Of a DNA stretch of 64,000 nucleotides, positions 16,690-63,230 are shown in pieces (the first letter of the stretch is position 1; each line of letters begins with the position of its first letter). The stretch covers positions 338,569-402,568 of the forward strand of contig BCKQ01000008.1 in NCBI GenBank assembly GCA_001600695.1, in the 5' to 3' direction. The notes beneath the pieces are model-generated. The model was not told where the DNA came from. It worked only from the letters and a program-made list of their open reading frames with translations, and did not search any database. Position numbers and translations under genes: made by a program. The stretch is from Ascoidea asiatica JCM 7603. Taxonomy: Eukaryota > Fungi > Ascomycota.

Positions 16690-17421
16690 ATATAAATATA
16701 AATAAAATATAAATAAAATAGAATAAAATAGTAATTTGGTTGGTTATATTAGTTTATGAGAAGAACCATGAAAGTGGTCTCTGTGTACCACGTTTGCGGG
16801 TGCGCGTAGATGTAAGTGCTAATACAGTATTGTGCATTTGATAGGAAGTTTCCATTCTTATGGGTGGAATGGCCTAAAATAGTAAATATCCTTGTTTTTT
16901 GAGGGTGAAAACGGAAAGAAATTTATGATTTCCAGGAGATGAAGAAGAAGATTTGAAAAAGTGAGTTTGAAATGGAGCAGAAAAGAGGAAAATTAAAAAA
17001 ATATGCAATTACCGAGCCACCAGGAGGTGCCTTACTCAGCCACACTTGTTTTATATTTTGTTTTATGTTTTTATGTTTTTGGTTGTGATGGGGGTGCAAA
17101 AGCGGAGAAGTTGGAAAGTAAAGTGAGGCTGAGGGATGGTAAGTGGATGGTAAGTGGATGGTGGATGGCGCATGAGTGGCGATTATTAATAATTTTACAT
17201 TTATTGTTCATACGAGCATTTTTAAGTAAGTGAAAGAGAGTGAAAATGCAATTAAAGAGATTTATTAAAGAGAAATTAAGATCTTTATTTATCAGTTAAT
17301 AAATCCATTATTTATAATCTTCAATTACAATTACATTTACATTAAGTAAATTATCTTTCTAGATTATTATAGATATCAATAGAATAGAATAGAATAGAAT
17401 AGAAAAGGAGGTATATTCATA

Positions 17422-33305: not shown

Positions 33306-33732
33306 TATTCAAATGACATTAAAAAAAAAATATCAAAGAAGTTGAAGGTTGAATTGAGAGAAAAAAGAGTGAATAAAACACATAGTTGAAATTAACAACT
33401 TTGATATATTGAGTATGTGATTAACTAATATTAACCAATACTGTTTTACTATTGTTCGATATCCTCCAGTATTAAGACACATTCAATCTCTTTCACAATC
33501 ATTTTCCACTCAGATATCGTCGATTATCGTTCTTATTAGTCTATTTCTCTGTTCTGGATTGTTTGTTTTGTTTTGCTTTGAGATTCATCATCATTTGTTT
33601 GTTTGTTTATTTATTTATTTTATTTATTACGAAGAAGAAATAAAGTTTAGGAACAAAGCCATTACACAAAATAGAAAAAGGCAAAAAGGGGCGCCGTCGG
33701 TGTGGTCTCTGTGGTCTCACCCAGAACAAATC

Positions 33733-35310: not shown

Positions 35311-36001
35311 ATTGATAACCTAAATTGTATTTGATAATAGAATTGATTAAATTTTTATTGAAATTATCCTTTATTAATTGAAAATTTATAAAATTATAAA
35401 GTATAAAACATTTTTAAAAAGCAGATTTTAAAAGTTTATATACTTTATCATTTTCACATTTAATACTCAACTTAAAACTGTTCTTATTCTTAGAGAAAAG
35501 CTAACCTGTAACTGTATGAGTTTAATTAATGAATAATTGTTTGAATTGAAAATAACTGGTTAAAGTTAAAGATTATCTTAAGTCAAATAGCCATAATAAC
35601 CAAATTGGTGACTGAGTAAAGCTAACAAAAGAAAAGAATAAAACTTTGGGACGAGTGAAATTATTTTGGAGCCAAAACAAACTTATTTTAAAGTTACCAA
35701 TTAACAATTTGCCAATTTTGAAGTTTTCCTGAGTTTGTCCCACAACGCCGGATTTGTGGGAGCTCTTAAATTAGAGACCACGTTTGTGGATGTTAATGAG
35801 TTGGGGTTGTGAACTTGCCACACGGGGGTCTAAACTTGCGCCTCAGTTTAGAGGTTTGTTATTGATTCTTGAAAAAAATAAATTTTTTTTTTGATGAAAT
35901 ACATGAAAATTGGATTATTCACGAAATACTGATAAGAAAATAGAATCAATCTTAGGATAGACTATTCATTTTTACATTTTTATCCAGTTATACTATAAGA
36001 A

Positions 36002-39457: not shown

Positions 39458-39934
39458 GAAAACATAAAATTGTAATCCTACATATATGTCAGCCTAATAA
39501 TGTTCGAGACCATATCTACGGATCTGTTTACTTTGTATATTCAGCTCTTCTTTTTTGGTCTGTGTAACAAGCAGATTAAATTAAAAGGTGCAAACTCCAA
39601 CGATTATAAAGAAGTTTTCAGTATAATGATGAGGAATATTTTGTTTTCTATTCAAGCTTTTGTGTTTTCAAGCAGCTGTTTGTTTGTTTGGGATTTTGGT
39701 TATGCTCGTTCTAAAGTTCTGGTTAAATGTTTATCTCTTTTTTTTGAAGTAAATGGTGAACTGATTACTTTCTATGAGTTCAGATAGGTGAGTGTATTCT
39801 TTTTAAATTGTTATGTTTGTTTCTATGAAAACTTTATGAGAAATAATAATCTAAAATCTCAAGTTGGATTATATAATTTATGTGATCATCAGATAATTAT
39901 AAGTTTCAAGGTAATTATATTGAATTTATTCAAA

Positions 39935-49805: not shown

Positions 49806-50721
49806 ACCTTGAAAGCTTGTTCCCGGTCGGAGTGGTCCGGGACTAGGGAAGGCCACTCAGCAAATTGAGCAGTGATTTGATTGGCTGGAGGTGAATAGTC
49901 CAGTATTACAGAAGAAGTACCGTCAAAGCGGCGATGAAGTTGGTGGCAGTTGAGACCAAATATAAGGATCTCCCTCTTTTTCACTTCATTTTTCTTCTTC
50001 TTTCTTTGTGGTTGAAGGCAATCAAATGAATTGAATTGAAGTAATGAAATATCATTTTACTGCAGTGAGTTGTTGATCGATGAGTGAAGAAGAGAAGAGA
50101 AGAGAAGAGAAGAGAAGAAGTTCCTAAGCTCTGGTTTTGATTCTTGATGGATTTTCTTTTCTTTTCTTTGTGCTTCTTCAGTTGGTGTCAATGAACTGAA
50201 ATCATTGGCAATTTACACCTGGAATACTTTACTTTATAATAAAATCAGTAATATTCAGTCTTAATCATATCACTTCTCAATGCTTCTTTATTCAATTCAA
50301 TAATCAATTCAATAATCAATTCAATAATCAATTTAATAATTCATTCAACTTCTTTCATTCAATCCATGAAACTGGTTTCTTTTGTTTTCTACTTCCGAGG
50401 GAACGTGGTTACGCTGCTTCCGAAACTGCTTCTATTTCCGAGGAGTTAACGGATTTTCTTTTTTGTTGCCTTCGATGAATTTGATGAATTTGATGAATTT
50501 GAATTCAATCAAATTTTTTAATTCTTTTATTATAAAAAGGAATAAAGATTATCATTAATTAATTCAATTTCTTTTTTTTTTTTTTATCTTTTTTGTATTC
50601 CAATTGATTTACTTTATTTCTTTTAATCAATCTTTATAATCAATTACTCCTTTTTATCTCAATTCATTTCAATTCATTTGATAGATAATTATACACATAG
50701 ACATAGATTAGATAGTTATAG

Positions 50722-57698: not shown

Positions 57699-57938
57699 AG
57701 GGCTTTAGTTTGAAAGAAGACCCGAGATAGTGGTCTCTAAATTGTTTTAGGGCTCTACCGGAATTTTAAATTTGAATTTTGAATTTGAAAAAGGAGAGAA
57801 ACAACAAAGAAAGAGAAGAAGAAGAAGAAGAAGAAGAAGAAAGAGAAGAAAGAGAAGAATAAACTGTTTGTATTGGAATGAAGAGAATGATAATGACAAT
57901 AGAGATAGGAATATAATCTAAGAAAGAACAATTGAAGA

Positions 57939-58383: not shown

Positions 58384-59493
58384 TTAAAGTTTACTTTTTA
58401 TTTTTGTTTCTGTCTTATTTATATTATCTTTTTTTCTATCAATTGAAACTAAACCTTCTTGAAATATATAAGCAATTAAATTACCATTTTGATTATATAA
58501 TCTACCATTCATTAAACTTAAATCATTATTTGATTTTAAAGATTGAGTGATATATAAATTATAATTATTTAAATTAAATTCATTATAATTTAAATTTGTA
58601 TTAAAATAAATTGAATGATCTAAAGATACAGAAAATTTATTTGAGAAATATTTTTTATTATATAATGGCATTAAACCAAATAAAAAAAAACAATCTGAAA
58701 GGTATGAAATTTCAATATCTTTAAAAGAAAATGAATAATTTTTTTTAAAATTTTTTTTTAATTTAGATTCTTTAAATTTTATCCAATAATAATATTCTCT
58801 TTCATTAATTGAAATATTTTTATTAAAAAATTCATAATTTGAATTTATATTAAAATTTAAATCATTAATATTTTTATAAATTAATTTTTTTGGTAATTTA
58901 ACAATTAATGGATCATTTTCATAATAATATAATAATTTTTTATTAATTTCAGATAATTTATTATATTCAATTAATTTTTCTTTTGTTTTATTATTATTAT
59001 TATTATTATCATTTAATAAAAGATTTAAATTAATATTATTAAATTTAGATAACATTAAATTTAAAAAATTATCATTTTCACAATTTTCAATACATTCATA
59101 ATTTTTTAAATTAATTTTTGGTATTGAATTTAATTGATTATGAGATTTATTATCATCAATTTTTTTAAAATTTATAAATTGATTAAATATTATTTTATCA
59201 TTTTGATAAATTAAAACTTGTCTATTTATAAAATTTTTACCATTTCTAATTCTTTTAACTTTTAAAATTAAATTTTTATTATTTGGATCACCAGAAATTA
59301 AAAAATAATTATGTAAACTATGTGGTCTAAAATTAAATTTTGGTAAAGTTTTAAAAGCTGCTAATAAAGATAATGAAATTAAAGTACCACCAAATATACC
59401 ATTATTTTTACCAGGTACATGTAAATAACCTGTATTTTTAAAAATATCTTTTTCAATTTCAATTAAAGATAATTGATCTTGTAATAATGACAT
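58384..59493 (-). CDS. TES1: Peroxisomal acyl-CoA thioesterase II
   Basis: GIFGGTLIS, HSLHNYFL, RIRNGKNF, SYLSD, VSLDHSIYF, QEGL; C-terminal SKL. Confidence 0.92.
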   Translation of the reverse strand: MSLLQDQLSLIEIEKDIFKNTGYLHVPGKNNGIFGGTLISLSLLAAFKTLPKFNFRPHSLHNYFLISGDPNNKNLILKVKRIRNGKNFINRQVLIYQNDKIIFNQFINFKKIDDNKSHNQLNSIPKINLKNYECIENCENDNFLNLMLSKFNNINLNLLLNDNNNNNNKTKEKLIEYNKLSEINKKLLYYYENDPLIVKLPKKLIYKNINDLNFNINSNYEFFNKNISINEREYYYWIKFKESKLKKNFKKNYSFSFKDIEISYLSDCFFLFGLMPLYNKKYFSNKFSVSLDHSIYFNTNLNYNEFNLNNYNLYITQSLKSNNDLSLMNGRLYNQNGNLIAYIFQEGLVSIDRKKDNINKTETKIKSKL

Positions 59494-59830
59494 TTTTTAT
59501 ATAATAAGATATATTAAATAGATGTAAACAAGATTATGAATATTAATAAATGAATTTTATAAGTAATTGAATTAAATTGAAGGAAATTAAACTATTTAAA
59601 TTAAAATTAGTTAATTCATATCAATTGGCATATAATCAAATAAATTCAAATTGAATAATATTAAGATCAATAATAAGAAAGTGATGAAGTCAAATGAAAT
59701 AAATAATTATTAAGATAAAGAAGAAAGATAAAGAAAGATATTTGCACAGTCTTTTTGGAAATTTACACTTTTTGGGGAAGTTGAAACCAAATCCAAATTA
59801 GGAAACAGAATACAAAAGCGCATGTGACCG

Positions 59831-60061
59831 GAAAGGTACCGCAGTGGTGGTCGTACCATTACGTTGGTAGTACCATAACATTGGTAGATCCGCTCTGTTG
59901 GTAGTACCTCAACGATGGTAAATCCATGACATTGGTAGTACCATGAAGTTGGTAGATCCTTTGTGATGGTACTACCATTCTCACGGATCTACCATCTTTA
60001 CGGTACTACCACCACTCTGGTACAGCCAACACTGCGGTACTACCAACACTGCGGTACTTCT
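59831..60061. repeat. 14-unit array with exact 17-bp period (9-bp quasi-palindromic core + 8-bp variable spacer), orientation reversed mid-array
   Basis: Cores start every 17 bp from 59849 to 60053: GGTCGTACC, GGTAGTACC, GGTAGATCC, GGTAGTACC, GGTAAATCC, GGTAGTACC, GGTAGATCC | GGTACTACC, GGATCTACC, GGTACTACC, GGTACAGCC, GGTACTACC, GGTACTTCT; a partial unit lies at 59832. Confidence 0.95.
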
Positions 60062-61479
60062 TTTTCCTGTTCCAAACTCTGCGATTTTCCGCGAGATTTC
60101 AGAGCCAGTTTTTAAAGCCAGTTTTTAAAGCGAGAGTTTTCGCGTAGCACAAACAACAACAACAACAACAACAATAACAGAAAGAAGTGGATTAAAAACC
60201 TATTTTTTATTCATTTCAATTGCAAAATAAAGATTTCACGAATTCGCATAAATATCAATGATTGAAATGATAAAAGATAATGATAAATGATAAATGATAA
60301 TGATAAATGATAATGATAAGATATAATAAAATAATTGAAATGGTAGTCATTATCATCTGATAATTATCAGGCTCTGTTTAATGTCATGTTAAGTTAAATT
60401 TCTGCTGATTTTAGTTTTAAATAGTATTGTAATTCTAGACTATATTAAATATATTTTATTTTTAATGTGCCGTATATTTTATGTATTTTATATTAAATTT
60501 ATTATTATTCAATAGAATATATATAAAAGAATTGAAATTCAAGTACCTGAAGGATATAAAGAAGTAATAAAACAATAATAATTAAAAGAATTATTGACTT
60601 CTTGTATTGTTTTAATTTCAAAAGACAAAAGACTTTTTAAATTATTCAAAAAAATTTATTATTATATTTATTTTACTCTGAAAGATATAAAGAATTTCAA
60701 TTCAATTCAATTCAAAACAAAACAAAAATAAAATAAAATAAAATAAAATAAAATAAAATAAAAAAAAAGAGTAGAGATTGTAAATAAAAGATAAAAAAAA
60801 ATAATTGACTACTTTTAATTTGATCTAAAGATCATCATTTATAATTCTTATTCTTATTCTTATTATTATTCTTATTATTATTCGTTAATAATTGTATTAA
60901 AATTATCAATAAAATATTATTTTAATAATTTTACTTTACTTTTAAAACCTATAGGTTTTCATAAATTTCATAAAGTTCATAAATTTCATAAATTTCATTA
61001 TCTTAAATTATATTAGTTTAAAATAATCTTAAATAAAGTTAAAATTTAGTTTTATAAAGTTATAAAAAGCTTTATAAAGTTATGTTGAGTAAAAAAATTA
61101 TTTAATATTATTTAAAATTATTTGAATTCAAACGGTTTTTATTTATTTTTTGCTTTATTTATCAATTATTTATCAATTATTTATTAATTATTTATTAATT
61201 ATTTATTAATTATTTATTAAATATTTCATTTCATTTCATTTTAAGACAATTTTGTCTTATGTTTTCATGTATTAATACATTCTATTATTAATTCAATCTA
61301 TAATATTTATATCCTATCATTATCATATTCATAATCATATCAATTCAAATAACTTATAATAAATTATAATAAATTATCAATAAACAGAGTTAATTACATT
61401 CTTCTTTTCTTTCTCTTTCCATTTAAGGATATTTAAATCTATAATGTTTTAAGGAGTTACTCCTAAACATTCTTTTAAA

Positions 61480-62468: not shown

Positions 62469-63230
62469 ATGTTTTCAAATTCAAATTTACAATCAAATAT
62501 CAATTCCCCAATGAATTCATTTAATTCTTCTAATTCTTCATTAATTTCAAAATGTGAAACAAGTGTTATAGATTTTGGTTATACACAATCAATTGAAATT
62601 AAAAGAAATTTATTACCAATAATTATGATAAAATTAGATTTAAATAATGTTTTAATTAATAATAATCATTTAAATATAGATCAATTAATATTAAAACATT
62701 CTTCTTTTTTTCAAAAACTTTCAATTTCTTTATATTATAATTCAAATCCAATAAATCTTAATAACAATAACAATATCAATAACAATATCAATAACAATAT
62801 CAATAATTGTACAAATTCAGTTTATCAAAAGATAAAAAATTCAAAATTAATTCGTTCAAATATACTTTATAATTGTTTTGATTCAAGATTATTTAATTCT
62901 TCAAATATTTCTGCAATTGAACAAAGTTATAATCAAAATAATAATCAATTAATAAATAATAATAATAATAATAATAATAAAAACAATTGTATAAACAATA
63001 ATGAAAAGAATAATATTAATAATCAATTAAATGAAATTCCTCCAATTGTATTTTTTTCATTTAAAACATTAATAGATAGTGGAGATTTTACAAAATCTGG
63101 ATTATATTTTTTTAAAATTAAAATAAAATTCAATTCTGGAATTACAAAAACATTTTTAACTGAAAATTATTTTGTAAAACCAAATCCATATTATAATTCA
63201 TTACCTTTATCAATATTCAAAGATATTTAA
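62469..63230 (+). CDS. Hypothetical protein (~253 aa from ATG at 62469), beta-rich segments separated by Asn inserts
   Basis: Open frame with genome-typical codons and AAAATG start. The ORF-track start at 62442 is a TTG. Confidence 0.7.
   Translation: MFSNSNLQSNINSPMNSFNSSNSSLISKCETSVIDFGYTQSIEIKRNLLPIIMIKLDLNNVLINNNHLNIDQLILKHSSFFQKLSISLYYNSNPINLNNNNNINNNINNNINNCTNSVYQKIKNSKLIRSNILYNCFDSRLFNSSNISAIEQSYNQNNNQLINNNNNNNNKNNCINNNEKNNINNQLNEIPPIVFFSFKTLIDSGDFTKSGLYFFKIKIKFNSGITKTFLTENYFVKPNPYYNSLPLSIFKDI

What the first reader, a model, noticed from the sequence alone, without database searches (positions are those of the whole stretch)
59831..60061. Phased 17-bp repeat-spacer array that inverts mid-way into a fold-back element
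Seen: 14 units at an exact 17-bp period, each a 9-bp GG-N5-CC core (GGTAGTACC, itself a palindrome around one base) followed by an 8-bp spacer that is different almost every time. The cores largely alternate GTACC/GATCC, giving a 34-bp higher-order period. From 59968 the cores switch to the reverse complement without losing phase. The array is symmetric around ATGGTA-C-TACCAT (59966-59978), so GGTAGATCC(59951)/GGATCTACC(59985), 59934/60002 and 59900/60036 pair perfectly. The left end GTACCGCAGTGGTGG (59836-59850) matches the reverse complement of CCAACACTGCGGTAC (60026 and 60043) at 14/15. Inference: conserved cores with free spacers and fixed spacing is not how the slippage minisatellites elsewhere in this window look; it suggests selection for cooperative protein binding. 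Candidates are a multimeric enhancer/silencer, a non-autonomous fold-back/MITE-like element with subterminal binding sites, a centromere/recombination element, or a long hairpin RNA. I found no clear target-site duplication and do not recognise the motif.
Basis: partly seen in the sequence, partly recalled or inferred. Interest (0 to 1): 0.9.

Follow-up and report, generated by a model that had tools for sequence, protein, structure and literature searches.

The report
Tightly packed yeast promoter-factor site array
This is not a fold-back transposon, centromere or hairpin RNA. It is 13 copies, packed every 17 bases, of an unidentified bipartite DNA motif that is common in the promoters of this Ascoidea yeast, most likely the binding site of a lineage-specific general promoter factor.

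Summary
The unit is CC-N8-GG (13 units, 59839-60054); the 'GG-N5-CC core' is the junction of two units. Arrays end on inward half-sites (38 of 42 ends). The same 17-bp packing occurs at 33 loci (73 hits, 2 control) with unrelated flanks; core spacing is only 17 or 34 bp. The 20 loci examined all lie upstream of genes. The unit profile matches a widespread single promoter motif, (GAG)ACCA-N5-RYGG-DTCT, enriched only in non-coding DNA, which also forms 27-29-bp arrays, one helical turn longer. In-phase inversion occurs at other loci, and spacers are not mirrored. Transposon, centromere and hairpin-RNA readings failed their tests. Best reading: a homotypic cluster of sites for an unidentified dimeric general regulatory factor, grown by slippage, in the TES1/orphan-gene divergent promoter. 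Binding and function are inferred. The array is absent from the A. rubescens orthologous promoters. The scan had already noted both array types and the single motif on other DNA of this genome; linking them as one site is new here.

The parts
59839..60054 (.). 13 tandem CC-N8-GG dyad units at a 17-bp period (the array proper)
59839..59969 (+). Units 1-8; the seven junctions between them read GGTAGWWCC on the + strand (two carry one mismatch)
59968..59976 (.). Junction at which orientation switches in phase (central G becomes C); not the centre of the array
59975..60054 (-). Units 9-13; junctions in the opposite orientation
60026..60054 (.). Units 12 and 13, identical: a recent 17-bp duplication
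   Evidence: 8/8 spacer identity
59834..59840 (.). Left terminal half-site: CC side only, no outer GG
60053..60061 (+). Right terminal half-site GGTACTTCT, the same right flank seen in several GAGACC-N8-GG sites elsewhere in the genome
59719..60234 (.). GC-rich promoter island holding the array
58384..59493 (-). TES1-like acyl-CoA thioesterase; ATG 346 bp from the array; likely target
62469..63230 (+). Divergent orphan gene 2.4 kb away, conserved in A. rubescens; low-confidence Ig-like beta-sandwich; possible second target, not shown to be the binder

Best explanation
The array is a homotypic cluster of binding sites for an unidentified, lineage-specific, probably dimeric general promoter factor of Ascoidea. 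The factor reads (GAG)ACCA-N5-RYGG-DTCT: two short half-sites on either side of a nearly free centre. Single strong sites carry the GAGA left flank and sit in many promoters. In the tightest packing (17 bp), the right flank of one site runs straight into the A-CC of the next, which creates the apparent GG-WWCTA-CC core and sacrifices GAGA. The weaker sites are then probably held through neighbour-neighbour cooperativity. Packing one helical turn wider (27-29 bp) keeps GAGA. Arrays grow by slippage duplication of 17- or 34-bp blocks, the centres then drift, and orientation can flip in phase because the dyad is nearly symmetric. Here the array probably acts as a nucleosome-clearing, activating element for the TES1/orphan divergent promoter. 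Shown: motif, unit, spacing rule, dispersion, promoter position, match to the single motif. Inferred: a protein binds, it is one factor, binding is cooperative, and the role is nucleosome clearing or activation.
For: CC-N8-GGTAGWWCC-N8-GG: 73 hits vs 2 control, 33 loci on 16 contigs. Core pairs within 25 bp: 28 at 17 bp, 6 at 34 bp, none at other spacings. Inner half-site present at 38 of 42 array ends against about 5% by chance. No shared flanks. All 20 loci examined are non-coding and upstream of a gene, 14 in divergent promoters, median 450 bp from an ATG. CCR-N6-YGG outside the arrays: 65 at spacer 8 vs a mean of 11.5 at other spacers in non-coding DNA (P about 1e-27), no peak in coding DNA. 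AGACC-N8-GG pairs: 50 vs 0 control, 44 at 27-29 bp. Profiles of the two families agree at positions not fixed by the query (A3 0.96/0.96; purine at 9 0.75/0.87; T14 0.71/0.60; C15 0.58/0.77; T16 0.71/0.81). Mixed arrays join both kinds 17, 26, 28 or 29 bp apart. Neighbours are mostly unrelated housekeeping and signalling genes.
Against: The factor is unidentified. The array is absent from the A. rubescens TES1 and orphan-gene promoters, so conservation across species does not support this particular array. The N8 excess in A. rubescens is modest (13 vs mean 5.2, but 11 at spacer 5). The 17-bp and 28-bp families differ at the left flank and could be read by paralogous factors.
Confidence: 0.72

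Rival explanations
1. The sites bind a pathway-specific regulator rather than a general factor, for instance one of the many velvet (NF-kB-like) proteins of this genome or the neighbouring orphan Ig-fold protein under autoregulation.
For: At least 10 full-length velvet loci, one 8.9 kb from this array and one 4.8 kb from another. Known velvet motifs share WWCC...GGWW half-sites (PMC4999599). Several neighbours are Ras/cAMP/MAPK genes: CDC25, CYR1, RSR1, HOG1. The orphan has features near LAG1/CBP60/velvet clusters, all scores under 0.9.
Against: Velvet motifs have a 2-bp centre, not 8. The orphan shows no profile match to velvet (E 0.77, shallow alignments) and only a generic Ig fold (best Z 8.8, unrelated proteins). 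Its ortholog has no array upstream. The single motif is in too many unrelated promoters for a narrow regulon.
Confidence: 0.12
2. The motif and its arrays are a chromatin or replication element (origin specifier, fork or transcription roadblock, insulator between divergent genes) rather than an activating element.
For: Preference for divergent intergenic regions (14 of 20). All four clean central-base switches run the same way, G then C. General factors such as Abf1 and Reb1 have such side roles (own knowledge).
Against: No array lies in a convergent, terminator-only interval among 20. Four of four switches is not significant (P about 0.12, two-sided). No replication data. This reading overlaps with the best one, since the same factor could do both.
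Confidence: 0.08
3. A neutral, decayed minisatellite with a local inversion, or the relic of a fold-back/MITE-like transposon.
For: Local duplications are evident: units 12 = 13; units 2, 3, 6 and 7 share 6-7 of 8 spacer bases; within-array spacer identity 0.35 vs 0.31 between arrays. The genome is slippage-prone.
Against: The same fixed positions recur at 33 unlinked loci while 82 of 88 centres differ. One period only. No shared flanks or terminal repeats. Strictly promoter-located. True minisatellites that match the pattern elsewhere mostly have constant spacers.
Confidence: 0.05
4. A long hairpin or multi-stem-loop non-coding RNA.
For: MFE -122 kcal/mol, z -11 against dinucleotide shuffles.
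Against: With the repeat frame kept, z is about -2. Unit arms are less complementary than shuffled. Most family members do not invert, so cannot form the long hairpin. No Rfam match.
Confidence: 0.03

Closest known systems
General regulatory factor sites of budding yeasts (Abf1, Reb1, Cbf1, Rap1; Tsankov et al. 2010, PMC2897762)
   Same: A short motif spread over many unrelated promoters; bipartite with a free centre like Abf1 (own knowledge); the paper shows that GRF repertoires are lineage-specific and turn over.
   Different: The sequence matches none of these consensus motifs (own knowledge). Strictly phased arrays of up to 13 sites at 17 or 27-29 bp are not something I know for them. Nucleosome depletion is untested; an Abf1 ortholog search was uninformative.
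Velvet-protein sites (PcVelA, Ryp2/Ryp3, VosA; PMC4999599, PMC3720256)
   Same: Pseudo-palindromic WWCC...GGWW half-sites read by dimers; this genome has an expanded velvet family.
   Different: 2-bp centre instead of 8; no phased arrays described in the passages read; no test links velvet to this site.
Mcm1/SRF CArG box
   Same: CC...GG dyad with A/T flanks, used in many yeast promoters (own knowledge).
   Different: CArG has a 6-bp A/T-rich centre; here the centre is 8 bp and 39% GC over its free part, and the spacer-6 class shows no peak.
Fold-back elements and MITEs
   Same: Internally repetitive, partly inverted sequence.
   Different: No terminal inverted repeats shared between loci, no common flanks, inversion in only a few arrays, promoter-only position.

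Membership tests
General regulatory factor site | Motif enriched in many unrelated promoters and not in coding DNA | tested here: met
General regulatory factor site | Nucleosome depletion over the motif in vivo | not testable with these tools
   no chromatin data available
General regulatory factor site | Bound by an identified abundant factor | not testable with these tools
   needs pull-down or ChIP
Abf1, Reb1 or Cbf1 site | Match to the known consensus | tested here: not met
   profile compared with consensus motifs from own knowledge
Abf1 site | Abf1 ortholog in the genome | tested here: inconclusive
   no PF04684 match, but the control rang nowhere
Velvet-binding site | WWCC-N2-GGWW consensus | tested here: not met
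   centre is 8 bp vs 2 bp in PMC4999599
Velvet-binding site | Velvet genes present in the genome | tested here: met
Mcm1 CArG box | CC-(A/T)6-GG | tested here: not met
MITE / fold-back transposon | Terminal inverted repeats and common ends among dispersed copies | tested here: not met
MITE / fold-back transposon | Target-site duplication | tested here: inconclusive
   no element ends could be defined; none seen by eye
Centromere | One locus per chromosome | tested here: not met
   33 loci, five on contig C8
Centromere | CENP-A occupancy | not testable with these tools
   no ChIP data
Structured non-coding RNA | Pairing kept beyond what the repeat frame gives; family match | tested here: not met
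Structured non-coding RNA | Transcript | not testable with these tools
CRISPR-like repeat-spacer array | Repeats and spacers long enough to carry targeting information | tested here: not met
   free part is about 6 bp
Neutral minisatellite | Even divergence along the unit; locus-specific unit | tested here: not met

The most novel reading that the evidence does not exclude
Ascoidea has recruited a new kind of general promoter factor, perhaps from its expanded velvet family or from a domesticated transposase, which polymerises along DNA in a fixed helical register (17 or 17+11 bp). Slippage-driven changes in site number would then tune promoters like a ratchet.
Probability: 0.25. Interest if true: 0.72.

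Novelty: new variant of a known kind. Interest (0 to 1): 0.5.

Why it matters
If right, it gives a precise site definition and spacing grammar (17 and 27-29 bp) for an unidentified general promoter factor in a little-studied yeast lineage. The 13-site array is the largest found and an ideal bait for identifying that factor. It would also be a clear natural case of tandem-repeat slippage building phased, cooperative site arrays in promoters. It does not reveal a new mobile element, centromere or RNA.

Tried and rejected
Rfam: nothing. Whole-region DNA search of the genome: only array-to-array matches. The array pattern in viral contigs and prokaryote genomes: 0 hits; five metagenome hits were mostly constant-spacer minisatellites or coding-like repeats. 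Single TACC-N-TGGTA dyads without GAGA: not enriched over control. Orphan ORF: no Pfam, no homolog by word search, one homolog among representatives, the A. rubescens ortholog; single-sequence model useless; two-sequence model gave only a generic Ig fold; no velvet profile match. No 17-bp array in about 64 kb of A. rubescens DNA, including the TES1 and orphan promoters, and no N8 excess in small samples of Saccharomycopsis, Pachysolen or Cyberlindnera. Literature searches for the motif found nothing relevant.

Full report
Setting. The window is G000:C8:338569-402568 of a 20.3-Mb, 71-contig, very AT-rich budding-yeast genome. Its ERG11 is closest to Ascoidea rubescens at 69% identity, so the host is an Ascoidea; A. 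asiatica is my guess from memory of the assembly size. The array lies in a GC island (59719-60234) between a TES1-like thioesterase running left (ATG 346 bp away) and an orphan gene running right (2.4 kb away).

Observation. The sequence holds 12 full GG-N5-CC 9-mers at an exact 17-bp period, with a half 9-mer at each end, and nothing similar elsewhere in the window. The GTACC/GATCC alternation and the in-phase switch at 59968 are real. The fold-back is weaker than stated. Eight units lie left and five right of the switch. Spacers mirrored about the switch agree at 4.0 of 8, against 3.7 of 8 for any left/right pair. Only the end units match well (unit 1 vs units 12/13, 7 of 8). The RNA fold z-score of -11 falls to about -2 when only spacer letters are shuffled.

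It is a family. Pattern searches of the genome gave 66 dimer matches against 0 control. The minimal element CC-N8-GGTAGWWCC-N8-GG gave 73 hits against 2, at 33 loci on 16 contigs. Among core pairs within 25 bp, 28 are 17 bp apart, 6 are 34 bp apart and none has another spacing. The window's array is the longest found (13 units; next 9, then several of 6). Flanks of 21 loci share nothing beyond the arrays and simple sequence. All 20 loci kept for analysis are non-coding and upstream of a gene, 14 in divergent promoters, median 450 bp from an ATG. Neighbours include CDC25, CYR1, HOG1/HRD1, RSR1, EFR3, UBR1, DST1, VPS13, GLO3 and ARO8/BNA2, named from Pfam and by eye: mostly housekeeping and signalling genes, with no single pathway. 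Five arrays lie on one 720-kb contig, which excludes centromeres.

The true unit. Beyond the last full 9-mer, the next slot carries the inward half (CC on the left, GG on the right) at 38 of 42 array ends, against about 5% by chance. The unit is therefore CC-N8-GG, and the 9-mer is the junction of neighbours. Orientation switches in phase at three other loci, always central G then C (four of four, suggestive only). Of 88 six-base centres, 82 are distinct. Unit arms are less complementary than shuffled (65 vs 84), which argues against RNA stem-loops. Local duplication is visible (units 12 = 13; units 2, 3, 6, 7 alike), so arrays grow by slippage and then drift.

Link to a genome-wide motif. AGACC-N8-GG pairs give 50 hits against 0 control at 27 loci, 44 of them at 27-29 bp, about one helical turn more than 17. 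Outside the 17-bp arrays, CCR-N6-YGG occurs 65 times at spacer 8 against a mean of 11.5 at other spacers in 96 kb of non-coding DNA, with no peak in coding DNA. GAGACC-N8-GG occurs 18 times in 244 kb, which extrapolates roughly to 1,500 sites. Read in the CTACC direction, the 17-bp units match the AGACC sites at positions the query left free. At four loci the two kinds are joined 17, 26, 28 or 29 bp apart. The consensus is (GAG)ACCA-N5-RYGG-DTCT. At a 17-bp period the right flank of one site runs into the A-CC of the next, which explains the 9-mer and the loss of GAGA. Single dyads lacking GAGA are not enriched, which fits weak sites that need neighbours.

Relatives. The orphan and TES1 have orthologs on one A. 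rubescens contig, in rearranged order. Neither promoter has the array; the TES1 promoter has one CC-N8-GG. A. rubescens non-coding DNA shows a modest spacer-8 excess (13 vs mean 5.2, P about 0.003, but 11 at spacer 5), including one GAGACC site. Small samples of other genera show none. The motif may be shared across Ascoidea, while this array is lineage-specific. No true match was found in viral, prokaryotic or metagenome collections.

Who binds it? Not determined. The genome has at least ten full-length velvet genes, although most Saccharomycotina have none (PMC10845976). Velvet motifs share WWCC...GGWW half-sites but have a 2-bp centre (PMC4999599). The adjacent orphan is a real gene (53% identical to its ortholog) with a low-confidence Ig-like fold, but it has no significant velvet match, and its ortholog lacks the array. 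The two-part idea of array plus own binder is not supported, though not excluded.

Mechanism and comparison. Most likely a dimeric factor reads two half-sites about one turn apart and binds neighbouring sites cooperatively only in one rotational register. It probably clears nucleosomes or activates, as Abf1, Reb1 and Cbf1 do; such factors are known to turn over between yeast lineages (PMC2897762). It works like a general-regulatory-factor site cluster but is not a site of any named factor I could match. Binding, cooperativity and function are inferred, not shown.

No RNA run was listed. Four array loci could not be fetched. Earlier notes of this scan had already flagged other 17-bp arrays, the 28-bp arrays and the single motif on other DNA of this genome; they are leads, not support.

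Verdict. A real, selected-looking promoter element; a new variant of a known kind. Interest 0.5.

Noticed in passing
G000: C4:419639, 457814, 487383, 559023; C7:518313, 622780; C12:462268; C1:656573; C3:1154123; C8:407345; partial on C6, C20, C4: Large velvet-family expansion (at least 10 full-length PF11754 loci plus partial ones) in a budding yeast, where most species have none.
   Followed up: partly
G000, 27 loci, e.g. L043:1706-1860: Sister arrays of GAGACC-N8-GG at a 27-29-bp period, at least 7 units long on C13.
   Followed up: yes
window 16766-16781, 33694-33709, 35774-35789, 39506-39521, 49952-49967, 57722-57737: Six single GAGACC-N8-GG sites in this window, nearly all intergenic.
   Followed up: yes
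window 62469-63230: Ascoidea-specific orphan with an Asn-rich insertion and an Ig-like predicted fold behind a long intergenic region; conserved in A. rubescens (P0124).
   Followed up: partly
window 60085-60146: Two CGCG elements, one SCB-like (TTTTCGCG at 60137-60144), just right of the array.
   Followed up: no
L052:5033-6604: HOG1 with a long Asn/Asp-rich N-terminal extension, in a divergent pair with HRD1 around a 17-bp array.
   Followed up: no
L051:3058-3708: 216-aa ORF with Cys/His spacing suggestive of zinc fingers and no Pfam match, next to a 17-bp array.
   Followed up: no
L036, L038, L039, L042, L045, L051, L054 (array flanks): CACGTG (Cbf1-type E-box) lies within 250 bp of 7 of 20 arrays; no background rate was computed.
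   Followed up: no
L068:14680-17568: In A. rubescens FPR1 and TES1 are separated by MET16, and the orphan lies on the other side: the region is rearranged relative to this window.
   Followed up: partly
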